From Perkinsela sp. CCAP 1560/9 (Eukaryota > Protista > Euglenozoa: Kinetoplastea), in contig CBFFSA010000007.1 of assembly GCA_965644495.1 (NCBI GenBank), forward strand, positions 124,001 through 188,000: DNA of 64,000 nucleotides, read 5' to 3'. The position numbers were made by a program, and so were the translations under genes. The first letter of the stretch is position 1; every line of letters begins with the position of its first letter. The notes under the pieces are model-generated. The model was not told the origin of the DNA. It did no database searches and saw only the letters and a list, made by a program, of their open reading frames with translations. This document shows, one piece after another, positions 1,369-34,035 of the stretch.

Positions 1369-1565
1369 TTTCTTTTTTGTGTTGTTCTACTTAGATCCGC
1401 TGTACTTAAGAGGATCATTGGGCTAAAGAAGGGTCTTTCTTCGGCTTACGCAGGTGTTCGGAAGTGTTTACGTATTGTAAGATTTTGTACAGCTCATGAT
1501 GAGCCTTACAGCTTTCTTATTTTCGTTACTATCTTTTTTATAAAAACATCGTATTCTAAGCCAGT

Positions 1566-2594
1566 ATGTCGTTCTTAGCCAGGCCTAGCCAAAAAACAGC
1601 CTCTAGACTTTGGCTACTTAGCCAAGGAGGAAGAATGCACTGCACTTCCAGACACCACGGATCGAACGCTATACTCACAATGCGAAATATGAATCGGACG
1701 AACGTCCAGTTACGCAGCGCAATCCGTTCCTGGATGCCTTTCGCATCCTCTTCTATTTCTAACATGCCACATGTTCAACAACATGTCGGCTGCGTTCCGA
1801 GTCGCTTTGCGTCCAATTTTGTACTTACTTCCCTTCCTACGTTACAGCAAACGCTCCGAATGCATTCCACGTCCAACACAGAGAACCAGAAAGCTTCTTC
1901 TGCAGAGGACTCGAAGGCAAGTTCAGAGGAAAATGAAAAGAGTCAAAAGGAGTTTGAAAATATGCACTTCATACGACGCGAGTACCTTGGCTTGCGCCAG
2001 GACATTCGTGAGTACCCCGACATCTACAATGCGGTGAACGCGTTCCAGTTCATTCTGTTCACCGTATTTTGCCTCAGCAGTACGGGTTCCAAAGCTGAGG
2101 AGGAGTTCTGGATCCGCATGTGTGGGATCGACCTCCAGTGGGGCTCACTCCTTGCTCCCCTGCTCCATGTATTCCTCACGACCAACTTTCTCTCCATGGC
2201 ATTTGCTATGCTTCTGTTGCACAATCTTGGCCATACGGTGATCCAGGCGGTCGGGGCTCCGTTCCTACTGCGGTACCTCTCAGTTGTAGCGTTAGGCTCC
2301 GGAGCTCTCATGTGTGGCATGAAGATGTTCTTCCCGAATATTGGACAAGGTGAAGTACAATATGGTCCATGGGATATAATTGTTGGTCTCTTCGTCGTGA
2401 GTGCTGCCACAAGTGGGTACTCCCCGCTGCAGCTGCTGGGGTCGTTTAGCGGATGGGTGAAGTATGCGGCGTTTCTTGGCGCAGGAGTAATCATGTACTA
2501 TGACTGGCAGCCCTGTGTGTTTGGATTTCTTGTGGCCTATGGGCTGCATCGCAGTGGAATCAGTCGTATTCCATCTACAGTGGCAGCGTCATGA
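1566..2594 (+). CDS. mitochondrial rhomboid-like membrane protein, probably catalytically inactive (TimRhom-like)
   Basis: Arg/Ser-rich presequence-like N-terminus, then about 6 hydrophobic segments with rhomboid-like spacing (LLHVFL, LHNLGHTV, YLSVVALGSG); no GxSG or catalytic His. Confidence 0.6.
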   Translation: MSFLARPSQKTASRLWLLSQGGRMHCTSRHHGSNAILTMRNMNRTNVQLRSAIRSWMPFASSSISNMPHVQQHVGCVPSRFASNFVLTSLPTLQQTLRMHSTSNTENQKASSAEDSKASSEENEKSQKEFENMHFIRREYLGLRQDIREYPDIYNAVNAFQFILFTVFCLSSTGSKAEEEFWIRMCGIDLQWGSLLAPLLHVFLTTNFLSMAFAMLLLHNLGHTVIQAVGAPFLLRYLSVVALGSGALMCGMKMFFPNIGQGEVQYGPWDIIVGLFVVSAATSGYSPLQLLGSFSGWVKYAAFLGAGVIMYYDWQPCVFGFLVAYGLHRSGISRIPSTVAAS

Positions 2595-2884
2595 CAGTGG
2601 ACGAGAGTGCAATGTAGTCGTGTGAAGGAAGATGCTAGTTTCGGCATCGACTACTAGGGTACGATAGATTGTTGTTTTAGTTCCTGTGTGCTACAAATGG
2701 TATTATACGATTGAGCTACCTATCCGGCATCACATAAATAAGGTCAGCTTTTAACTAACAAACATACATGTAGGAAAAGAAAACAGTTTTAAGAGCCTCT
2801 CATAATACTTGTAAGAATGTTAAGCTTATTTCTCAACTTATTTAATCTAGACACGCATATTCTAGAATACATTAAGGAAAGTAA

Positions 2885-3568
2885 ATGCCAAAAAAGTTCG
2901 GCATCAATGATAAAAGTGCAGCGTCTAGAGATCGAAATAACCAACGTAAGGAACGCGTAGCGCAAGAAAAGGCACAGGCAATAGAGAATGCAAATTGGAA
3001 AGAAACAGACAAACATGAAATAAAAAAAGCCGAGCGAATCGCTCAACGTGAAGCCAAGGAACTAGAACGTCTAGCACGTGAGGCCGAAAAGTCCGCATTG
3101 CGCCGTGCCGAGGAGAATGCGTTATCATCTTCATCTGCCCCTAAAAAGGTCACGCATTTTGAACTCCAAAGAGACTTAGAACGTACGTCATCTCGTAATC
3201 GAATGGCTCATTCCTCGTCTCAAAATTTTATCTCACCGGACGAGCACGCGAGTACGCTAATGAGTCACTCCACGTGCGCCACCAATGCTACCATTGCAGA
3301 TGACGCACAAGTCATAGCGTCAGGCTTTGATACGGTTTCCGACGCTCTTTCTGGACTTAGTGCACAACCGGATCGACACCCCGAACGTAGGATGAAAGCT
3401 GCATTCCTACAATACCAGTCGACTCATTTACCTAAATTAAAGCGTGATATACCCGGACTACGTCTGTCGCAATATAAACAAATGCTATGGGATAAATGGC
3501 TGAAGAGTCCGGAAAATCCCATTGTCCGAGCACACTTGACTAGTTTGGTGCACCAGAACCCAAAGTAG
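2885..3568 (+). CDS. CCDC124: CCDC124/Lso2-family ribosome-associated coiled-coil protein
   Basis: MPKKFGINDK start; C-terminal DRHPERRMKAA...PGLRLSQYKQMLW..W.KSPENP. Confidence 0.9.
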   Translation: MPKKFGINDKSAASRDRNNQRKERVAQEKAQAIENANWKETDKHEIKKAERIAQREAKELERLAREAEKSALRRAEENALSSSSAPKKVTHFELQRDLERTSSRNRMAHSSSQNFISPDEHASTLMSHSTCATNATIADDAQVIASGFDTVSDALSGLSAQPDRHPERRMKAAFLQYQSTHLPKLKRDIPGLRLSQYKQMLWDKWLKSPENPIVRAHLTSLVHQNPK

Positions 3569-3955
3569 TACCGCTAAGATTTCTGATGATTTCGGTTTGG
3601 AGTAAAAAAACATCACGAGATAAAATTTGCAATTACAGATTGCAATTACAAAACCGTACACCCATGTGGGCATGTACTCCCTGATGACCATACCTACATG
3701 TATCACTGACCATGTATGAACTCTGACAATGCATCATAGACCACCATATCTACCCGTAGAGTTCGTTCCTTGTGAAATTTCGTGCTGCCAAAACTACTTC
3801 ATAACCTACGTTTATCATAAATTATGAGTCCCTCATTAATATGCCAATTGTAATGTCAAGGAGACAAGGTTTACAAGCAGTGTGTTACTATGCTTAGGAA
3901 AACTATCTGTTTTCGATTATCCTATTCCATGAAAAGTCTATGATGGACTATCTGC

Positions 3956-4993
3956 ATGCTATCCCACAAAACTTTCATCAAGATAGATAGCTCATTGCGA
4001 AGCTCCGTAAAAGTTCTTGAATTCTTAGATGGATTATGCACTCAATGCCTCGCCCGTCTTAAACAGGACCATCCTGCTCATACACTCTTCCTGAACACTA
4101 GAGGTCGAGTACTCGCCGATGCATTAGTTCACCTTACGCCACGAGAAAACATTATTGTTGAGTGCGATGAGTCGCAGAGCCCTTTTTTGGTACAACATCT
4201 ACGCAAATTCGCAGAATATGCAACCATTCCTTTAGACATAAGCATAGCGTCAGACATGACGGTAGGAGTTTATTCGAAGAAGAGCGAACTTGAAGAAATA
4301 CCGTATCTGAAGAACATTTTACAAAGCTTATTGCTATTCCGCAAGACCGACGCCTTGCCTCAGACTAGACCAGACTTTTCTTTCGCTGCTCGTGATCCTC
4401 GCGCATCGCTTTCTCATATTCATCGTATCTACTTTAACAAGGATGAGACTCCGTCTTCCCGGTACGAAGAAAAGGACCTAGTTGGTCTAAGGGCATCAGC
4501 ATATCGTTCCTTACGGCATATGGAAGGAATTGCGGAAGGATCAGAAATTCAATATGAAAGAGCTTTACCAACAGAGTTCAATTTCGATCTACTAGGCAGC
4601 ATTTCCTACACAAAGGGTTGCTACTTGGGTCAAGAGCTTACAGCTAGAAGTCATTTTTCAGGTATTATAAGAAGAAGAGTTGTACCCTTTTATGTGCCGC
4701 ATCCAATTGCTGAGAGTCAAATCAATGGGAGTATTTCTGAAGCAATATCCCTGTTAGATTCGGAGGGTAAAGCCATTGGTAAAGTTATAGCGTTTCATAA
4801 GCAATGGGGACTGGCCTCATGTACATGTCATCCCCTTTTTCAGAGGGAATTCAATGACGTCGAGATCAATGCATCACTCTGCGCTACGTGGCAAGGTTAT
4901 TTACCTTGTCGACTTCAATATACGGAGAGCCAGACCCAGAGCAAAACCAAATGCTACCTGTATATTCCCTATTGGTGGCCTGACGATAGATAG
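3956..4993 (+). CDS. IBA57: IBA57/YgfZ folate-binding Fe-S cluster assembly factor
   Basis: FLNTRGRVLAD and signature ISYTKGCYLGQELTAR. Confidence 0.9.
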   Translation: MLSHKTFIKIDSSLRSSVKVLEFLDGLCTQCLARLKQDHPAHTLFLNTRGRVLADALVHLTPRENIIVECDESQSPFLVQHLRKFAEYATIPLDISIASDMTVGVYSKKSELEEIPYLKNILQSLLLFRKTDALPQTRPDFSFAARDPRASLSHIHRIYFNKDETPSSRYEEKDLVGLRASAYRSLRHMEGIAEGSEIQYERALPTEFNFDLLGSISYTKGCYLGQELTARSHFSGIIRRRVVPFYVPHPIAESQINGSISEAISLLDSEGKAIGKVIAFHKQWGLASCTCHPLFQREFNDVEINASLCATWQGYLPCRLQYTESQTQSKTKCYLYIPYWWPDDR

Positions 4994-5391
4994 AGCAAAG
5001 TTCTTAGTTACTAGTAATTCCAGTAAGAACAAGTCATGAAAATTTTTCATGACAGTTTTTCAAAAACTGCGGATGGAGTGCAAATTAATGACATTATGTA
5101 AAATTATACAAGGCCATGTGATATTACGCAACATGATGCAAGGCCGCGTCGGATCACGCAAGATATTCTTCTACTCGACACAGCGGGTAGAGATCAAAAT
5201 GAGATCACGCGAGGTCAGACCCATAGTTTCTTTGTACTTGGTTTGGGGGTATCTAATTTCTTTATTGGCATTTATCAGCTAGATGTTTAATGTATGATGA
5301 TATCTGATACTACATTGGGTGCAGTGTAACGAAAGTACTACTTCAACTCAATTGCATAATAGTATAGCTTTGTTGGATACTAAAAGATTGA

Positions 5392-6375
5392 ATGCTTCCG
5401 ACGCAACATGCTGACAATACGTTTTTATACCAAGTCGCAGGCCATGGTGACATCCTACATTCAGGAACGGACTCACAAAAAAGTTTGTCAGTGTGGAAAG
5501 TCGCGAGAAAGCATGAACTAGCATGTTACAATAAGATGTTGGCAAAAAACCACCCCTTACACAAGCTTTCCCACTACGTTCCACCCTTCTATGGGGAAGT
5601 CATCTCACCCTGTACGCAGAATGCTAATGATAATTGTCCATTACCTTATTCTGAGCCAAAAGTGTCTCATTCTTCATGTCGGATTTCAGCTGCTCCTAGA
5701 CTGTTTCAAAGCAAACGGTGCTTAGTCAGTCGCTTAGAAATGAAGAACATGGTGTCTTCATGTGGCAATCCTCAGGCTATGGATATTAAGCTGGGAAAAG
5801 TTCATCACAACCGAACAATGCACCCTGAGAAGGTGCAGGCGAGTAAGAAGAAAGTATCAGTGTGCACTTCAAGGGCATATGCATTGCGCATCTCCGGTGC
5901 TTCAGAAGTACATAATGCGAGACTCCGAGGACGCTCAGCTCAATCGTTGTTAGAATTACGTGACGTTCTGCAAGAATTCTTTCTTCGTTCTTCGATAGAC
6001 TGCTATAATAAATTTGCCCACGAAAGCACCGTGTTACATCAATCTATTCGCGAAATTACTTCCCTTCAAAATGCGCTGCGAAACATTACTCTGCATACCA
6101 GTTTTATATCATGTTCGGTTCTTATTACCCACGACGAATCTGCGAGTCATCGCACATCAGGTTGGAATTGCGCTGCAAAAGTCATTAATGCAAAGCTCAT
6201 CGATTTTGCGAATTGTGTTTCATCTTCCGAACACGGATTGCTTGATATTCATGTGGGTGCGGCTTACGGACTACGTATGTTGGCTACTCTTCTGCAACAC
6301 CTTTACCACAAGTCACTCTTTATTAACACCTATAGAACAGACACTCATAACATACATGTAGACATACATGTATGA
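5392..6375 (+). CDS. inositol polyphosphate kinase (IPMK/IP6K family)
   Basis: QVAGHG, PxxxDxKxG (PQAMDIKLG), SSLL-like SCSVLI, and LIDFA motifs. Confidence 0.8.
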   Translation: MLPTQHADNTFLYQVAGHGDILHSGTDSQKSLSVWKVARKHELACYNKMLAKNHPLHKLSHYVPPFYGEVISPCTQNANDNCPLPYSEPKVSHSSCRISAAPRLFQSKRCLVSRLEMKNMVSSCGNPQAMDIKLGKVHHNRTMHPEKVQASKKKVSVCTSRAYALRISGASEVHNARLRGRSAQSLLELRDVLQEFFLRSSIDCYNKFAHESTVLHQSIREITSLQNALRNITLHTSFISCSVLITHDESASHRTSGWNCAAKVINAKLIDFANCVSSSEHGLLDIHVGAAYGLRMLATLLQHLYHKSLFINTYRTDTHNIHVDIHV

Positions 6376-7873
6376 ATCATATCCACTAAGCCACAGTGCA
6401 AACGTTTATCGATACCTATGTTTCTACTGCTTCATGATTTTTTGGAACAAACCTGTCTTTGTACGCACCCAATCACTACTTCATTCTACACTAAAAAGAT
6501 TCGTGTAAGTGTATTTCTATTTAGTCTAACCTTCACTCGACTCTTTGATGCGTGAAATCGTCTCGATACAGGCCGGCCAGTGTGGAAATCAAATTGGTTC
6601 TAAGTTTTGGGAAGTGATATGCGATGAGCACAGCGTCGACCCGTCAGGCACGTATGTGGGTGACAATGATCGTCAGTTGGAGCGCATTAATGTGTACTTC
6701 AACGAAGCGACCGGAGGTCGATATGTTCCGCGTGCCGTGCTGATGGATCTGGAACCTGGTACAATGGACAGCGTTCGGGCTGGTCCGTATGGTCAAATCT
6801 TCCGCCCGGACAACTTTGTGTTTGGTCAGACTGGGGCCGGGAATAACTGGGCTAAGGGGCACTACACGGAGGGTGCTGAGCTCATTGATAGCGTACTGGA
6901 TGTTTGCCGCAAAGAGGCTGAAAGCTGTGACTGCCTGCAGGGATTTCAAATCTCACACTCCCTTGGTGGTGGGACAGGTTCAGGTACCGGAACTTTGTTG
7001 ATTTCCAAGCTCCGTGAGGAGTACCCGGACCGCATGATGCTCACATTTAGCGTGATTCCTTCGCCCAAAGTGTCTGACACCGTCGTGGAACCCTACAACA
7101 CAACTCTTTCGGTGCACCAACTCGTAGAGAACTCGGATGAATGTCTGTGCATTGACAATGAAGCGCTGTATGACATTTGCTTTCGTACCTTGAAGTTGAC
7201 GACTCCCACGTTTGGTGACCTGAATCATCTTGTGTCTGCGGTGATGTCCGGTGTGACGTGCTGTTTACGCTTTCCGGGACAGCTGAACTCCGACCTTCGC
7301 AAACTTGCGGTGAACCTGGTTCCATTTCCTCGCCTGCACTTCTTCATGGTCGGGTTTGCCCCCCTGACTTCTCGTGGCTCTCAGCAGTATCGCACATTTA
7401 CTGTTCCTGAGTTAACGCAGCAAATGTTTGACTACAAGAACATGATGTGTGCCGCGGACCCGCGACACGGACGCTATCTCACTGCATCCGCCCTGTTCCG
7501 TGGACGTCTCTCCACGAAGGAGGTTGATGAGCAGATGTTGAACGTGCAGAACAAGAACAGCTCGTACTTCATCGAGTGGATCCCGAACAACATCAAGAGC
7601 TCTGTGTGTGACGTCCCTCCGAAGGGGTTGAAGATGACGGTGACCTTTATCGGGAACAACACTTGCATCCAAGAAATGTTCCGTCGCGTGGCGGAGCAGT
7701 TCACTGCAATGTTTCGGCGAAAGGCTTTTCTTCACTGGTACACCGGAGAAGGGATGGATGAGATGGAATTCACGGAAGCGGAAAGCAACATGAACGACCT
7801 TGTGGCAGAATACCAACAATACCAGGATGCCGGGATCGAGGAGGAAGAACTCATTGACGAGCCGATGGCTGAA
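6321..7873 (+). repeat. duplicated segment A (copy B at ~9756-11324)
   Basis: CDS and ~130 nt upstream appear identical at offset 3451; a further ~100 nt upstream are similar with indels. Confidence 0.95.
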
Positions 7874-29192: not shown

Positions 29193-29726
29193 ATGATCTC
29201 ATCGAACCGATTTGGTTCAGGATCCACTGCCTCAACGGAACATGGTGGACTCCCCCCTGCTCAGTTTGACAAAGTCGCGGAGAGGGACGTGAAGCCACCC
29301 TTTCCCATGCGCAACGTGTACTGTTTGACAGCCCTTCCACAGTACGCTGCTGATCCTCTCTCTCAGAATATCAGTATCGAAATGTTATGTTGGGAACACC
29401 TTCAGCAGCAGCGTTTGAGGCGACAGTCTGGGCCTGCCTCCTCCGGGTTATTTGGCTCGGCATCTCCTGAGGCGCTCTCTCCGCTGCTACAATCGTTTTC
29501 ATCGGCCAAACCTACAGGGGGTGGAGGGGCACCGGTGGGGAGTGTAGGGGGCGCTCCCTCTCTTGAGTGGCCCAATCGCCCGACCTCTGGATTCGGAACC
29601 TCACCACCCATGCAAGGTTCGACAAATACTGCGTCCGGGAGCACCCTGTTTGGTACCGCTCCTAGCGGCACGCTTGAGAAGACATCTATTTCCTCACCCT
29701 TTAGCTCTACCGGATTTAAGTGGTAG
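29193..29726 (+). CDS. small FG-nucleoporin-like protein with GLEBS-like motif
   Basis: VYCLTALPQY..SIEMLCWEHLQ resembles the Nup98/Nup116 GLEBS motif; RFG, GLFG, GFG, LFG in Ser/Gly/Pro-rich sequence. Confidence 0.65.
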   Translation: MISSNRFGSGSTASTEHGGLPPAQFDKVAERDVKPPFPMRNVYCLTALPQYAADPLSQNISIEMLCWEHLQQQRLRRQSGPASSGLFGSASPEALSPLLQSFSSAKPTGGGGAPVGSVGGAPSLEWPNRPTSGFGTSPPMQGSTNTASGSTLFGTAPSGTLEKTSISSPFSSTGFKW

Positions 29727-30018
29727 TGTCCCCTCAACTGCAAGTATTTAATGATCGCGCCTACAACCACCATGTAGTATACGAAGCAGGATTATTTCAT
29801 GTGAAATTTTTGTTAACGGATTGTTTTTGCTTGGAATAATCATTTCAAGTCACAATATTCGATTCAACTTAGAATATGTTGGGGCGAAAATTAGACTACG
29901 TACAAGATAAAAAAGTCCCGAAACAAGGGTGTACGGGAGAACCGTAAATAAACCATTAAGGAAACAATTTTTACAGAAAAAATAGCCAAACCACACCTTC
30001 CTTAGATTCTAAGAATCC

Positions 30019-33000
30019 ATGTCCTGGGGAAATCCATCCGGTGCATGGGGAGGCGCCCCAAATCCAAACCCCACTCCAACCGGCTGGGGATCGACCACGA
30101 GCACAACCCCAGGGCCCACCGCTTCCCCATGGGGAAGCAGCCAACCTGCCCAACCCAGCTGGGGAGCCCCACCCACTCTGGGGGCGACCAAACCCGCCTG
30201 GGGGTCGTCCACCACCTCGAGCGCCCCCGCACCGTGGTCCGGGCTCCCCACAACGGCAACCACAACCACCCCGGGCTCCGGATCCCATCCCTGGGGGGGC
30301 GTCGCCCCCTCTGCTGCTGTTTCATCCGTACCCGCGCCTACGCCCTGGGGAGCCCAGCCCCCACGCGCTGCGCCCTCCCCCCCCCTCTGGGGCAGCGCCC
30401 CCACGACAGGGATCACCGCGACGCCTGCCGGTATGGGCTCGAGCCCCGGCAACGCGTGGGGGAGTGGTGGGGGCAGGAGTAGTGCTCCCCCGAGTACGGG
30501 ACCCGGGGGGTGGGGGACTCAACTCGCCGGGAGTGCCCCAACCTCCGGGGCAGGCTGGGGTGGTTCGACCTCGGGAGGAGCCCCCTCGAGTGGGACACCG
30601 GGCTGGGGGACAGCCCCGGGAGCCCCCGTGAAGCCTGCTGGGGCTGGGGCCACGCCGTGGGGGAGTACGAGCACGGGGAGTAGTGGTACAGGGGGGTGGG
30701 GAGGGATGGGGGGAGGTGTGACGGGACTGGGCTCCACGACGACACAGACCTCTCCGTTTGGTACGGCCTCTGGGACACAGCCTCCTGCATGGGGAGGAGG
30801 GACTGGGGGGTTGGGAACGACGGGGAGTGGAGGTTCGGTTGCAACGGTCAGTGGATGGGGTGCGGGTCCGACCCAGCCCGCTGCGAGTAGCACGCTGAGT
30901 ACCTCTGGAACCTCCTGGGGGTTGGGTGCGAAGCCAGCTACGAGTTCGTGGTCCACAACCGCGACTTCAGGAGTTCTTTCTGGAACCACACCGTTTGGCA
31001 GTTCTCAGACGACGTTGTCCAGCTCCACACCCGGGCCTTCCCTTGGTTCTTCGGCGCCATGGGCTCCCACCAAACCATCGGCTCCTTGGGGGGGCAGTGG
31101 GACGAGCGGGTCGGCGTGGCCCTCCCTGGGTGGATCTTTGCAGCCATCCGCGGTCCCTGCCGTGCCCTCGTTTGCGCCTCCCGCGAGTGCACCCACAGGG
31201 CCTGTGCTAGATCTAGTTCGTCACCCCTATGGGAACCTTCTGGAGGCTTCCGGGGAGAAGTTGCGCGCTATGAGCGAATCTAAACCTTTGGCCCACACGC
31301 AGAGCATCCCACGTTCCCTAGTGACGCGTTCTCGTTCCCAAGTACATCGGCTGCCGACACATGAAAAAGCGAAAAATCAGCACAGTGAACGACAGCAAAC
31401 GCCATTGACCTTGAGCACGGGTCATATACCCACTCTACAAATAGATGCAGAAGCATTGAGGAGATCAGCTTCCACTGTACGTGTGCGACGAAATGTTGAT
31501 ACTTCTTCGGAAGAAGAATTCGGAGCCGTGAAGAAACTTTCTTTACTAACCCCGCAACCAAGAGAGAACCACACGCCTGTTTGTGAACCCAACGAGCGTC
31601 CTACATGTGTGCGAGCGGGAGGATTTCCAACACTTGTGGATACGACGCATATTGGCATACTCCCAAGTCTTGATGAGCTGCAGAGTCGAACGCCGAATTC
31701 CTTAAAGGCGGTGCCCAACTTTGTTATCTATAGAAAAGACGGAAAATTGCAGGTCAACTTCTTGGAACCTGTTGACCTTACGGGCTGCACGCTTGATGAG
31801 TGTGTACGTTTGCAAAGTAGCGGTCATGTGACTTTTCCACCCGCTTCCTCATTACAAATTCCTGCGCTAGTCCTTGTTCGTGGATTAATCGGCCTTTCAC
31901 AGGATGACGTTCAAGAAAAATGCTTTCAGGATGGTAATGTATTTGTAGACTTTCTCAAGGAGAATGGCACGGACACACTAGTGTACTTAACTAATGCAGA
32001 TTCCAGCTATGAAATACCTGACTTGTACAACCGCACCAATCGCTACGCCATCAACCAAGTTTTCCCGATTCAGCATGACTCGTTCCCAGGTGGTGACATT
32101 AGTTCCAAAGAGTTGCTCCCGACTGCTCTAGAATCGAATGAAGAAATCAAGAAAGCCCCAGTTTGGTCTAAAACGAGCAAACAAACTATGAACTACGACG
32201 TGTTTCTTCCACGTAAAGAAGCTGATTCTAAAATTAGACCCTTCGATGGAGCTTCAGCTCGGGATCTCCGAGACGGATATTCGGTACTTTACAGACCACG
32301 TGCGGAGGCGGAAAACGCGATTGATCTTCACGACCACGCTTATACACCTGCAGAAAGATTGAGCATACCAGAAAATTTTATGTCGCATGCTGATGTATCG
32401 GATTTTGCAGAAACAAATTCATCAGAAGAGCAGATTTGGCTCGAGGATATTGACTTTCGAACAATGGAGCCAGATAGAGATTTTTCTGCCAGTATATCAC
32501 ATGATTTAATTCGTAATTTTAGCACAGAATCTCGAGCTCTGCTTAAAAATGTGCGCGGAAACTGGTCAAAGGAAGGTTTGCTGTGCATTCCGTCGGGTGC
32601 AATGTTGGGACGAAAACACGTTCAAGCGAGCAGCATTTACTCAATGCGCTCTATCGCCACGTCATTCGACGTCGGTGATTTGGTTACCGCTTTTTCTTAC
32701 ATACAGTCTTGCACGAAACCACGTGATGAATTTCCGAGCACGGCGTCGAAAAGAAATGTTTGCTTCCGTACAGAAACTACAGAGGGAAAAAACCTACTCG
32801 CATCTCTACATGCCCTGGTAACACCCAAACTGCACGACTACAAAAATTTGAGCCCGGAAATTGCGCTCAACGATTTACTTAGAGAGACAATGGAAGAGGC
32901 CATTGGATTACTTCGCTCCTGGTTCGAATTAGAAGGAAGCGTATGTATGGAAGACAAAGATTATGAGGAAACTTATAACGAAGGTATGCGGCGACAAAAT

Positions 33001-34035
33001 ATTCAAGATTGGTTGGGTGAGTGCGTGAAAAGAACAGCTGGAAGTCCCCGCTTCCCAGGAAAACCACTATTCAGTCTTTTGCTGAAAAGAAGAACTACAG
33101 AGGCAGTTGAGCTTTGTATTTCAATGTCAAAGCCCGAACTTGCGGCGATTCTTGCTGGGACTGGATACGGCGCCGTTAGTAACGCCACTGATTGTGCCCG
33201 TTCATATCTGAACGAAAAGTATGAAGAATTATCCGACGATCACAAATCATGTTTAAAGCTAGCCGCTGGAGATCTCGACGAACTTCTGGACGAATGTCAA
33301 TTTCAATATAAAGAGGGAAAGGTAAGACGAAATCCACTGGGAGCAGATTGGCATCATTTGCTGGGTGCCTACATGTGGTATTGTGCTCCCTGTTCTTGGT
33401 CTTTGCGGAAGTGTTTTTCTAGCTTTAGAGATGCCTTACGGAATTGTAAGGAACTCAAAAATGGTAGATATAATTCATTCGAGAGAGTAGTACCGCATTA
33501 CGCCTTTCTAGGAGATGTCTTGAGCGATTCTGGTAACGACTTTTCAATAAAAATTGCCAAGAGCGCAATGAAACGGAAGGATATTACGTATCTCTTGCTT
33601 CAGCATTTTTGTGAACAACAGCCCGATTTTTGGAACTATCTCTTGGTTCCTTTTTGCCACTCCCCTTATCCCTTGGATTACTTGTTGCCTACTATCATTG
33701 TTCTAGTTCTAAGGTCCAATTCTTGTGCCCCAGATCAAGTAGCAGATTCAATACTACTACGTTGCATTACACAACTGGAGCACCTACAAGCACATGATTG
33801 CAGTATGACATTGATGACACTTCTATGTAATGAAGAAATTCGACAAAAACAGAGCGAGGAGTATATTCTTCGTAATGCTACTTACTTTAATAAGAGAGAA
33901 GCCGGATCGATATATGATCTTGATGTAAATAGTCACGCGCAAGCCGATACTAGCGGTGTAACAACGACCGGGGTGCAGAGTAAAACTGTGGACGTGGTCA
34001 GAGAGGTACGGAGTGCAGTACACAACCGTATGTAG
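30019..34035 (+). CDS. NUP98: Nup98-Nup96 (Nup145/TbNup158-like) nucleoporin with WG repeat domain
   Basis: Low-complexity repeat N-terminus; APD-like PSLDEL...VPNFVIYR..VNFLEPVDLTGCTLDE; Nup96-like LFSLLL....EAVEL....LAAILA and DWHHLLGAYMWY. Confidence 0.85.
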   Translation: MSWGNPSGAWGGAPNPNPTPTGWGSTTSTTPGPTASPWGSSQPAQPSWGAPPTLGATKPAWGSSTTSSAPAPWSGLPTTATTTTPGSGSHPWGGVAPSAAVSSVPAPTPWGAQPPRAAPSPPLWGSAPTTGITATPAGMGSSPGNAWGSGGGRSSAPPSTGPGGWGTQLAGSAPTSGAGWGGSTSGGAPSSGTPGWGTAPGAPVKPAGAGATPWGSTSTGSSGTGGWGGMGGGVTGLGSTTTQTSPFGTASGTQPPAWGGGTGGLGTTGSGGSVATVSGWGAGPTQPAASSTLSTSGTSWGLGAKPATSSWSTTATSGVLSGTTPFGSSQTTLSSSTPGPSLGSSAPWAPTKPSAPWGGSGTSGSAWPSLGGSLQPSAVPAVPSFAPPASAPTGPVLDLVRHPYGNLLEASGEKLRAMSESKPLAHTQSIPRSLVTRSRSQVHRLPTHEKAKNQHSERQQTPLTLSTGHIPTLQIDAEALRRSASTVRVRRNVDTSSEEEFGAVKKLSLLTPQPRENHTPVCEPNERPTCVRAGGFPTLVDTTHIGILPSLDELQSRTPNSLKAVPNFVIYRKDGKLQVNFLEPVDLTGCTLDECVRLQSSGHVTFPPASSLQIPALVLVRGLIGLSQDDVQEKCFQDGNVFVDFLKENGTDTLVYLTNADSSYEIPDLYNRTNRYAINQVFPIQHDSFPGGDISSKELLPTALESNEEIKKAPVWSKTSKQTMNYDVFLPRKEADSKIRPFDGASARDLRDGYSVLYRPRAEAENAIDLHDHAYTPAERLSIPENFMSHADVSDFAETNSSEEQIWLEDIDFRTMEPDRDFSASISHDLIRNFSTESRALLKNVRGNWSKEGLLCIPSGAMLGRKHVQASSIYSMRSIATSFDVGDLVTAFSYIQSCTKPRDEFPSTASKRNVCFRTETTEGKNLLASLHALVTPKLHDYKNLSPEIALNDLLRETMEEAIGLLRSWFELEGSVCMEDKDYEETYNEGMRRQNIQDWLGECVKRTAGSPRFPGKPLFSLLLKRRTTEAVELCISMSKPELAAILAGTGYGAVSNATDCARSYLNEKYEELSDDHKSCLKLAAGDLDELLDECQFQYKEGKVRRNPLGADWHHLLGAYMWYCAPCSWSLRKCFSSFRDALRNCKELKNGRYNSFERVVPHYAFLGDVLSDSGNDFSIKIAKSAMKRKDITYLLLQHFCEQQPDFWNYLLVPFCHSPYPLDYLLPTIIVLVLRSNSCAPDQVADSILLRCITQLEHLQAHDCSMTLMTLLCNEEIRQKQSEEYILRNATYFNKREAGSIYDLDVNSHAQADTSGVTTTGVQSKTVDVVREVRSAVHNRM

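What the first reader, a model, noticed from the sequence alone, without database searches (positions are those of the whole stretch)
30019..31150. A 'WG-nucleoporin': Nup98-96 repeat domain uses Trp-Gly instead of Phe-Gly
Seen: the first ~375 aa hold about 19 WG dipeptides (SWG, AWG, PWG, GWG) and only 2 FG, in Ser/Thr/Gly/Pro spacers typical of FG domains, fused to APD- and Nup96-like domains. Established: Nup98-family barriers are built from FG/GLFG repeats, and WG/GW repeats are known Argonaute hooks. Inference: a wholesale F-to-W swap in a permeability-barrier domain, implying altered phase behaviour or transport-receptor binding, or an Argonaute platform at the pore. The region coincides with a GC-rich skew island, so GC pressure (TTY to TGG) may have helped.
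Basis: partly seen in the sequence, partly recalled or inferred. Interest (0 to 1): 0.8.

Follow-up and report, generated by a model that had tools for sequence, protein, structure and literature searches.

The report
Tryptophan-glycine nuclear pore repeat domain
In this divergent kinetoplastid the nuclear-pore protein Nup98-96, and also Nup62, carry Trp-Gly repeats where all other known relatives carry Phe-Gly repeats. This is a natural exception to a rule thought to hold for all eukaryotes and can be tested directly at the bench.

Summary
ORF 30019-34035 (1338 aa) is the orthologue of TbNup158/Nup98-96. It has a Pfam Nup96 match (E 1e-17), a non-cleaving autoproteolytic domain (APD; family profile against PDB Nup98 APDs, E 1e-20 to 1e-23), and its named homologues are trypanosomatid Nup158.

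- **Repeat domain:** the first 375 aa hold 23 Trp, 19 WG and only 2 FG. They have no Tyr, Asp or Glu. Shuffling gives 5.1 WG on average, and 0 of 20000 shuffles reach 19.
- **Position:** the domain sits exactly where relatives have their FG domain, from the start codon to a conserved PYGN landmark.
- **Relatives:** Bodo saltans, a metagenomic bodonid-like contig, T. vivax and Novymonas have 32-57 FG and 0-1 WG. One unnamed relative (P0006) mixes GGWG and GGFG in the same repeat unit.
- **Nup62:** the Nup62 orthologue of this genome, on another contig, also has 12-13 WG followed by 5 FG.
- **GC island:** the W-using stretches lie in synonymous GC islands (GC3 0.61-0.65 against about 0.40-0.47).
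- **Upstream ORF:** ORF 29193-29726 keeps the FG repeats and the GLEBS motif (the Gle2/Rae1-binding motif of Nup98). Bodo has the same split.

Best reading: WG acts as the FG-equivalent cohesive and receptor-docking motif. The Argonaute-hook idea is untested; Piwi genes are present. No RNA evidence could be obtained. I class it as a new variant of a known kind.

The parts
30019..34035 (+). ORF-B, 1338 aa: Nup98-96/TbNup158 orthologue (WG repeat domain, linker, non-cleaving APD, Nup96 alpha-solenoid)
   Evidence: The first in-frame ATG after the stop at 30010-30012 is 30019. The true 5' end was not verified by RNA.
30019..31143 (+). WG repeat domain (aa 1-375): 19 WG, 2 FG, 23 W, charge-depleted, S/T/G/P/A spacers
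   Evidence: It is the positional homologue of the FG domains of Bodo saltans, L013, T. vivax and Novymonas.
31225..31236 (+). PYGN landmark (aa 403-406, context LDLVRHPYGNLLE) that ends the repeat domain in all kinetoplastid orthologues
   Evidence: relatives have LPDF..KPYGN.LL at the same architectural position.
31591..32028 (+). Nup98-type autoproteolytic domain (APD), without the HF/S catalytic motif
   Evidence: Pfam PF04096 E 4.6e-5 at aa 548-600. Alignment A1. The family profile hits PDB Nup98/Nup116/Nup145N APDs at E 1e-13 to 4e-23. No [HY]F[ST] in aa 520-760.
33067..33885 (+). Nup96 alpha-solenoid domain (aa 1017-1289)
   Evidence: Pfam PF12110, E 1.1e-17, 64.5 bits against a cut-off of 25.
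29193..29726 (+). ORF-A, 177 aa: residual FG repeats (RFG, LFG, GFG, LFG) flanking a GLEBS motif. This is the ancestral N-terminal part of Nup98-96, now on its own reading frame.
29319..29408 (+). GLEBS-like core (CLTALPQYAADPLSQNISIEMLCWEHLQ)
   Evidence: The same signature occurs in Cavostelium Nup98-96 (SITAMPQYQTKSFEELRWEDIQ) and in P0006. BLASTP to the Bodo upstream ORF core gives E 0.003.
29727..30018 (.). 292-nt AT-rich spacer (GC 0.36) with stops in all frames, ending in a pyrimidine tract plus AG just before the ATG. Intergenic-like, probably a trans-splice acceptor region.
   Evidence: unique in the genome; GC like other intergenic regions; no convincing in-frame GT-AG at the end of ORF-A.
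30000..31200 (.). GC-rich island covering the WG domain, with GC enrichment also at synonymous sites
   Evidence: GC3 is 0.645 against 0.405. GC3 per 100 codons runs 67, 71, 60, 57 and then about 40.

Best explanation
ORF-B encodes this kinetoplastid's single Nup98-96 (TbNup158-type) nucleoporin. It is an uncleaved protein whose Nup96 solenoid sits in the outer ring and whose N-terminal disordered domain projects into the pore channel.

In this lineage the cohesive hydrophobic motif of that domain has changed from Phe-Gly to Trp-Gly. About one [P/S/A/G]-W-G-[G/S/A/T] motif occurs per 15 residues, in an uncharged Ser/Thr/Gly/Pro/Ala spacer. The same change has happened in the N-terminal half of the Nup62 orthologue. 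This points to a change in the pore's repeat grammar in at least two nucleoporins, not an oddity of one gene.

I infer that the WG motifs do what FG motifs do elsewhere. They would stick to each other to condense the permeability barrier, and they would provide docking sites for transport receptors, which must then have adapted to an indole side chain.

I further infer a likely cause. Both W-using stretches lie in local islands of synonymous GC enrichment, which this genome also has in ordinary genes. Trp (TGG) is the only aromatic residue with a GC-rich codon. A GC-biased substitution process, combined with selection to keep aromatic stickers and avoid charge, would therefore push TTY towards TGG, for example through TTG (Leu). 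It would also push Asn/Gln spacers towards Ser/Thr/Pro/Ala/Gly. The lower motif density (1 per 15.5 residues against 1 per 8-12 in relatives) fits a stickier residue.

Shown here: identity of the protein, the motif counts, positional homology, the parallel in Nup62, the GC3 island, and rarity among relatives. Inferred: barrier and receptor-binding function, receptor co-adaptation, and the GC-driven route.
For: - **Identity:** Pfam Nup96 E 1e-17 with a weak APD match. The APD family profile hits PDB Nup98 APDs at E 1e-20 to 4e-23. An exhaustive HMMER search returns kinetoplastid Nup158 proteins: T. vivax, T. conorhini, Novymonas, Phytomonas and Bodo saltans.
- **Motif statistics:** 19 WG observed against 5.07 expected, with 0 of 20000 shuffles reaching 19.
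- **Positional homology:** the repeats run from the start codon to the PYGN landmark, as in Bodo (MRGGFGQQ...PYGN) and other relatives.
- **Nup98-type grammar:** 1 acidic and 7 basic residues in 402 aa, and no Tyr. Compare the features listed in PMC9918544.
- **Parallel in Nup62:** 12 WG in aa 1-400 against 2.65 expected (0 of 20000 shuffles), then 5 FG.
- **Natural F/W interchange:** P0006 uses GGWGK/GGWGA and GGFGK/GGFGA as the same repeat unit.
- **Relatives:** 26-57 FG and 0-2 WG.
- **GC3:** 0.645 in the WG domain against 0.405 in the rest. In Nup62 the WG part is 0.608, the FG part 0.474 and the coiled coil 0.464. Bodo and L013 FG domains show no GC3 excess. Similar GC3 islands occur in ordinary genes.
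- **Genetic code:** standard for W and F in DNA polymerase delta.
Against: - There is no transcript, proteomic or localisation evidence.
- Engineered YG phases exclude native importins (PMC9918544). An aromatic swap is therefore not automatically compatible with transport receptors, and no receptor adaptation was examined here.
- WG/GW runs in disordered regions are also the known signature of Argonaute hooks, and the genome has Piwi genes.
- Only two nucleoporins of this genome were examined. My genome-wide motif scans were too noisy to list all FG/WG domains.
- The protein sits on a very long branch, so relaxed constraint cannot be excluded.
- One relative's alanine-rich repeat domain (P0020, 160 Ala in 560 aa; its DNA was not examined) has no W, so GC-rich coding alone, if that domain has it, would not be sufficient.
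Confidence: 0.62

Rival explanations
1. The WG domain is an Argonaute hook. The Trp residues would insert into the Trp-binding pockets of the Piwi domain and tether RNAi machinery at the nuclear pore, and they would not build the barrier. A dual role is also possible.
For: WG/GW motifs flanked by small residues in a disordered region are the defining look of Ago hooks (established knowledge; GW182 references cited in PMC4622936). The genome encodes Piwi-domain proteins: three identical 973-aa tandem copies and two 926-aa copies.
Against: The same F-to-W change occurs in a second, unrelated FG nucleoporin (Nup62) at the place of its FG domain, and it runs on into FG repeats. P0006 uses W and F interchangeably in one repeat unit. 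The domain is the positional homologue of relatives' FG domain, and it shows the extreme depletion of acidic residues typical of cohesive Nup98 domains. No Ago-specific feature was found.
Confidence: 0.1
2. The WG domain is a drifting, largely functionless by-product of a GC-biased island in a fast-evolving gene. The working barrier would be supplied by other nucleoporins that still use FG.
For: The protein sits on a very long branch, about 4 substitutions per site. GC3 islands are a regional feature that also hits ordinary genes. Earlier first-stage notes list other candidate FG nucleoporins in this genome (unchecked).
Against: Pure drift under GC pressure would not keep 19 of 23 Trp followed by Gly, a regular spacing of about 15 residues, zero acidic residues and an open frame of 375 codons. 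It would also not produce the same grammar independently in Nup62. Arg (a GC-rich codon) is almost absent, which indicates selection against charge.
Confidence: 0.15
3. The WG reading is an artefact: a wrong frame in GC-rich DNA, an assembly error, or a non-coding or intronic stretch wrongly joined to the real gene.
For: GC-rich DNA keeps several frames open: a 196-aa ORF in another frame and a 156-aa ORF on the minus strand overlap the region. The assembly has at least one domain split over two frames (Nup54-like). The automatic gene model P0001 starts only at aa 204. No RNA evidence was obtained.
Against: The WG frame is continuous with the APD/Nup96 frame for 1338 codons. The motif is periodic and context-specific and far above the shuffle expectation. 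The alternative frames give Pro/Arg-rich sequence without repeats. An unlinked gene on another contig shows the same grammar in frame with its Nsp1_C domain.
Confidence: 0.04

Closest known systems
TbNup158 (Trypanosoma brucei) and kinetoplastid Nup158 orthologues; Nup98-96 / Nup145 in general
   Same: The order is the same: repeat domain, PYGN linker, APD without catalytic residues, Nup96 solenoid. It is a single uncleaved FG/alpha-solenoid protein as described for TbNup158 (PMC4758718). These proteins are the best sequence matches.
   Different: Relatives have 26-57 FG (mostly GGFG with Gln-, Asn- or Ala-rich spacers) and 0-2 WG. This protein has 19 WG and 2 FG with Ser/Thr/Pro/Gly/Ala spacers and a lower motif density. 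The GLEBS part is on a separate upstream ORF, as in Bodo saltans.
Cohesive Nup98 FG domains as characterised by Ng et al. 2023 (PMC9918544)
   Same: Uncharged low-complexity domain with regularly spaced hydrophobic-Gly motifs, selection against acidic residues and Tyr, placed N-terminal to the APD anchor.
   Different: That paper lists selection against tryptophan as a feature conserved across all eukaryotic clades. Here Trp is the main sticker. GLFG motifs are absent.
Tetrahymena MicNup98A/B with NIFN instead of GLFG repeats
   Same: A natural Nup98 homologue whose repeat motif departs from the canonical one, thought to change transport specificity (PMC5450191, PMC8421043).
   Different: NIFN keeps Phe. 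It is a paralogue-specific variant used to tell two nuclei apart. Here the aromatic residue itself is changed, in the only Nup98-96 gene and also in Nup62.
GW/WG Argonaute-hook proteins (GW182/TNRC6 and similar)
   Same: Many Trp residues next to Gly and small residues in a long disordered region.
   Different: Those proteins are not pore components. Here the repeats replace an FG domain in two nucleoporins and are mixed with FG. Binding to Argonaute was not tested.
P0006, an unnamed kinetoplastid-like Nup158 from a public run (Logan)
   Same: A natural Nup98-96 orthologue that uses Trp in its repeats: 11 WG, as GGWGK/GGWGA.
   Different: It is still mostly FG (22) with some YG. The W and F units are otherwise identical, the spacers are Ala-rich, the GLEBS motif is in the same ORF, and it does not group with this protein in the tree.

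Membership tests
Nup98-96 / Nup145 / TbNup158 | C-terminal Nup96 (Nup145C) alpha-solenoid domain | tested here: met
   PF12110, E 1.1e-17, 64.5 bits (cut-off 25), aa 1017-1289.
Nup98-96 / Nup145 / TbNup158 | Nup98-type autoproteolytic domain (peptidase S59 fold) | tested here: met
   PF04096 alone is marginal (24 bits against a cut-off of 28.4; 27.6-28.4 in the six-frame search). A profile of this segment plus 14 homologues hits PDB Nup98, Nup116 and Nup145N APDs at E 1e-13 to 4e-23.
Nup98-96 / Nup145 / TbNup158 | Catalytic HF/S (or YF/S) self-cleavage site | tested here: not met
   No [HY]F[ST] in aa 520-760. TbNup158 likewise lacks the catalytic residues (PMC4758718), so this matches the kinetoplastid subfamily.
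Nup98-96 / Nup145 / TbNup158 | Closest homologues are Nup98-96 orthologues | tested here: met
   The exhaustive HMMER search returns 17 homologues, all with an APD/Nup96-type match. The named ones are trypanosomatid and Bodo Nup158-like proteins. It is the only APD match in the genome.
Nup98-96 / Nup145 / TbNup158 | GLEBS (Gle2/Rae1-binding) motif within the N-terminal repeat region | tested here: inconclusive
   A GLEBS signature is present, but on the separate upstream ORF-A. Whether the two ORFs are joined in the mRNA could not be tested. Bodo saltans has the same split.
Nup98-96 / Nup145 / TbNup158 | FG (GLFG/GGFG) repeat domain N-terminal to the APD | tested here: not met
   2 FG against 19 WG in aa 1-375. 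The domain is present and positionally homologous, but its motif is WG.
Cohesive Nup98-type FG domain (features listed in PMC9918544) | Extreme depletion of charged, especially acidic, residues, and of Tyr | tested here: met
   1 D+E, 7 K+R and 0 Y in 402 aa.
Cohesive Nup98-type FG domain (features listed in PMC9918544) | About one hydrophobic motif per 12 residues; total length 500-700 residues | tested here: inconclusive
   One aromatic residue per 15.5 residues. The domain is 402 aa, or 579 aa if ORF-A is counted.
Cohesive Nup98-type FG domain (features listed in PMC9918544) | Selection against tryptophan; prevalence of GLFG | tested here: not met
   23 W and no GLFG.
Cohesive Nup98-type FG domain (features listed in PMC9918544) | Phase separation into a selective barrier that admits transport receptors | not testable with these tools
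   Needs recombinant protein assays.
Argonaute-hook GW/WG proteins | Multiple W flanked by G or small residues in a disordered region | tested here: met
   19 WG and 6 GW in 375 aa.
Argonaute-hook GW/WG proteins | An Argonaute/Piwi partner is encoded in the genome | tested here: met
   PF02171 hits of 118.5 bits (three tandem copies) and 29.9 bits (two copies).
Argonaute-hook GW/WG proteins | Physical binding of the Trp residues to Piwi-domain pockets | not testable with these tools
   Needs pull-down or structural work.

The most novel reading that the evidence does not exclude
This organism runs a nuclear-pore permeability barrier built largely from Trp-Gly rather than Phe-Gly motifs, in at least Nup98-96 and Nup62. 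Its transport receptors would have co-adapted to bind indole side chains. That would show that FG is not chemically obligatory for a natural pore. It would also give a natural partner set (WG domains plus their own receptors) for testing why nearly all eukaryotes settled on Phe.
Probability: 0.45. Interest if true: 0.85.

Novelty: new variant of a known kind. Interest (0 to 1): 0.72.

Why it matters
FG repeats are treated as the universal chemistry of nuclear-pore selectivity. Recent biophysical work states that Nup98 FG domains of all eukaryotic clades select against tryptophan, and that swapping Phe for Tyr shuts out native transport receptors (PMC9918544). A natural lineage in which two core barrier nucleoporins use Trp-Gly would be the first natural counter-example.

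It offers a ready-made test of how far barrier cohesion and receptor recognition depend on the identity of the aromatic residue, using co-evolved WG domains and receptors. It also gives a concrete case where a regional mutational bias (synonymous GC islands) may have reshaped the sequence grammar of a disordered, phase-separating domain.

There is a practical point as well. Surveys that identify pore proteins by counting FG motifs would miss these proteins. Public gene models of several kinetoplastid orthologues start downstream of the repeat domain, which hides such variation.

Tried and rejected
- **Word-index protein searches.** I searched with the C-terminal part, the WG domain and the Nup62 coiled coil. 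Each found only the genome's own models. Only the exhaustive HMMER search reached relatives.
- **RNA evidence.** Expression, the 5' end, and splicing against fission remain untested.
- **Genome-wide motif scans.** Degenerate DNA patterns for triple WG and triple FG were swamped by G-rich simple sequence. The FG scan was also swamped by the antisense of a PSPVPN-repeat gene. The scans recovered the Nup98-96 WG domain but not Nup62, so they cannot give a census of FG/WG domains.
- **Pfam Nucleoporin_FG (PF13634).** It gave only a weak false hit in a CHCH protein.
- **Self-search.** The WG domain used as a protein query against its own genome found only itself.
- **Nup54-like hit.** It has no repeat domain and was uninformative.
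- **ESM Atlas.** The feature search gave no usable hit.
- **BLASTP of ORF-A against P0006 and T. vivax.** It missed the short GLEBS motif, and phmmer against the PDB gave nothing. A signature search and the Bodo comparison did find the motif.
- **Cis-intron joining ORF-A to ORF-B.** In-frame GT-AG pairs exist by chance (14), but none has a convincing donor at the end of ORF-A. The spacer is unique, so it is not a mobile element.
- **Tree.** This protein sits on a branch too long to place, and the careful search did not finish. I draw no conclusion about a single or double origin of W usage.
- **Altered genetic code.** Rejected.
Full report
**Observation**

The + strand ORF 30019-34035 is open for 1338 codons. 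Its first 375 residues contain 23 Trp. Nineteen of these are followed by Gly, and there are only 2 FG. The stretch has no Tyr, Asp or Glu, 4 Lys and 2 Arg, and is dominated by Gly, Ser, Thr, Pro and Ala. The other 963 residues have an ordinary make-up (9 W, 35 F, no WG).

With the composition held fixed, shuffling gives 5.07 WG on average, and none of 20000 shuffles reaches 19. Trp is preceded by P/G/A/S, and WG is followed by G/S/A/T. There is about one aromatic residue per 15.5 residues.

The stretch coincides with a GC-rich island: GC is 0.68-0.70 against about 0.44, and the GC skew flips from -0.17 to +0.23. The DNA has no strong internal repeats, so this is not a recent tandem expansion. 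TGG and TTY align with conserved Trp and Phe in the neighbouring DNA polymerase delta gene, so the genetic code is standard.

**Identity of the protein**

- Pfam gives Nup96 (E 1.1e-17, aa 1017-1289) and a sub-threshold Nucleoporin2/APD match at aa 548-600. It is the only APD match in the 21-Mb genome.
- An exhaustive HMMER search with aa 421-1338 found 17 homologues. The named ones are Nup158-type proteins of Trypanosoma vivax, T. conorhini, Novymonas, Phytomonas and Bodo saltans, plus an amoebozoan Nup98-96.
- A profile of the APD segment with 14 homologues hits solved Nup98, Nup116 and Nup145N APDs at E 1e-13 to 4e-23.
- There is no HF/S cleavage motif. TbNup158 likewise lacks the catalytic residues (PMC4758718).

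This is therefore the kinetoplastid Nup98-96 orthologue. Earlier notes of this scan call the organism an early-branching, spliced-leader-using kinetoplastid. The orthologue set is consistent with that.

**Is the WG domain the counterpart of an FG domain?**

Yes, by position. In every orthologue with a complete reading frame, the repeats end at a conserved landmark, LPDF..KPYGN.LL. Here the landmark reads LDLVRHPYGNLLE at aa 403.

In Bodo saltans the gene starts MRGGFGQQ and carries 32 FG and no W up to PYGN. Here it starts MSWGNPSGAWGG.

The public model of the best-scoring relative (P0002) is truncated. On its contig the real frame is 1410 aa with 45 FG, a GLEBS motif, the APD and Nup96.

| Protein | FG | WG |
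|---|---|---|
| This protein (ORF-B) | 3 | 19 |
| L013 (metagenome contig) | 45 | 1 |
| T. vivax | 54 | 0 |
| Novymonas | 57 | 1 |
| P0020 | 37 | 0 |
| P0003 | 26 | 1 |
| Cavostelium | 45 | 2 |
| Bodo saltans (repeat domain only, up to PYGN) | 32 | 0 |

One relative is mixed. P0006, an unnamed 1482-aa protein from a public run, has 11 WG, 22 FG and 6 YG. It uses GGWGK/GGWGA and GGFGK/GGFGA as the same Ala-rich unit. This shows that F and W can stand in for each other in a natural Nup158 repeat. It also shows that W usage is rare among orthologues but not unique.

In a quick tree P0006 groups with L013 and P0003. This protein sits on a branch of about 4 substitutions per site and cannot be placed.

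**The change is not confined to this gene**

The Nsp1_C family search found the Nup62 orthologue on another contig. Its full frame starts MSGFPQPSPSPWG. It has 12 WG in aa 1-400 (expected 2.65; 0 of 20000 shuffles reach 12), and then 5 FG before the coiled coil.

**The GC island**

- GC3 is 0.645 in the WG domain and 0.405 in the rest of the gene. Neighbouring genes are at about 0.41.
- In Nup62 the WG part has GC3 0.608, the FG part 0.474 and the coiled coil 0.464.
- The FG domains of Bodo and L013 have no GC3 excess over the rest of their genes.
- Comparable GC3 islands (65-95% over 200-400 codons) occur in ordinary, non-repetitive genes of the window.

The island is therefore a regional property of this genome, not a consequence of the repeats. 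Among aromatic residues only Trp has a GC-rich codon. A GC-biased process, with selection for aromatic stickers and against charge, would favour W over F or Y and S/T/P/A/G over N/Q spacers. That is the difference seen between this domain and GGFGQQQQ-type relatives. This step is inference. One relative's alanine-rich repeat domain (P0020; its DNA was not examined) has no W, so GC-rich coding alone, if that domain has it, would not be enough.

**The upstream ORF**

ORF 29193-29726 (177 aa) has RFG, LFG, GFG and LFG motifs around a GLEBS signature, CLTALPQY...ISIEMLCWEHLQ. This matches the motif of Cavostelium and P0006 and the core of three GLEBS-like motifs in the Bodo upstream ORF (BLASTP E 0.003).

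It is separated from ORF-B by 292 nt of unique, AT-rich sequence with stops in all frames. The spacer ends in a pyrimidine tract and AG.

Bodo saltans has the same layout: a GLEBS ORF, a stop, 117 nt of pyrimidine-rich spacer, then the ATG of the FG-APD-Nup96 gene. L013 and P0006 keep everything in one frame.

A real gene fission is therefore more likely than an assembly error or an intron. It needs RNA data, which I could not obtain.

**How it most likely works**

The WG domain keeps the grammar that Ng et al. describe for cohesive Nup98 domains. That grammar is an uncharged low-complexity sequence with strong selection against acidic residues and Tyr, and with evenly spaced hydrophobic-Gly motifs. 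It breaks their stated universal selection against tryptophan (PMC9918544).

The most economical reading is that WG is the functional equivalent of FG, both for cohesion and for receptor docking. A stickier residue would be used at lower density.

The same paper shows that a YG phase still forms and is selective but excludes native importins. A working WG pore would therefore imply adapted receptors. I did not test that.

The Argonaute-hook reading cannot be excluded. WG runs look like hooks, and Piwi genes exist. But it does not explain the parallel change in Nup62, the mixing with FG, or the positional homology.

**Novelty**

Full-text searches for WG repeats or tryptophan in nucleoporins found nothing reporting such a protein. 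WG appears only as the Argonaute motif or as a control motif in a bioinformatic study. The nearest natural precedent for a changed Nup98 motif is Tetrahymena MicNup98 with NIFN, which keeps Phe. I class this as a new variant of a known kind.

**Limits**

- There is no expression or localisation evidence.
- Only two nucleoporins of the genome were examined.
- The motif scans could not give a census.
- The first ATG is assumed to be the start.

Noticed in passing
L048 (Bodo saltans CYKH01002220.1) 3322-3960 and 4077-7862: Bodo saltans has the same split as this window. A 212-aa ORF with three GLEBS-like motifs ends in TGA. After 117 nt of pyrimidine-rich spacer, the FG-APD-Nup96 gene starts. The GLEBS/Nup98-96 fission therefore looks real and older than this genome. 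L013 and P0006 keep one ORF.
   Followed up: partly
window ORFs starting 23697, 43184, 49324 (codons 200-400), 54632 (codons 100-300): Local islands of very high synonymous GC (GC3 63-95% against a background near 40%) occur inside ordinary, non-repetitive genes. It is a regional genome feature of unknown cause, possibly biased gene conversion.
   Followed up: partly
L046 (G000:C3:578500-583400) nt 1418-3775: The Nup62/Nsp1 orthologue has 12-13 WG in its N-terminal 400 aa, then 5 FG, then the Nsp1_C coiled coil. Its WG part is also a GC3 island.
   Followed up: yes
L049 (G000:C67:14500-23500) 2206-5598 (+): A Cys-rich, PSPVPN-repeat, membrane-anchored protein of 1130 aa. Its antisense strand reads as a perfect-looking (GFGTGEG)n FG repeat of 966 aa, which is a trap for motif-based FG nucleoporin scans.
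   Followed up: yes
G000:C1:751033-751409 (-), L010/L011: The Nup54 Pfam match is split over two overlapping reading frames (profile positions 5-63 and 63-134). This could be a frameshift, an assembly indel or a broken gene. There is no repeat domain upstream.
   Followed up: no
G000:C7:654678-682871 (L001-L003): Three identical 973-aa Piwi-domain ORFs lie in tandem about 11-13 kb apart. Two further identical weaker copies lie on C11 and C21.
   Followed up: no
P0001, P0002 (L013), P0009 (L048): Public automatic gene models of this protein and of two relatives start downstream of the repeat domain. Protein-level surveys would therefore miss their FG/WG domains.
   Followed up: yes
G000:C1:748935-750035: A long tandem array of an 18-nt G-rich unit (TGGGGGTAGGGGTAGTCG) lies next to the Nup54-like locus.
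   Followed up: no
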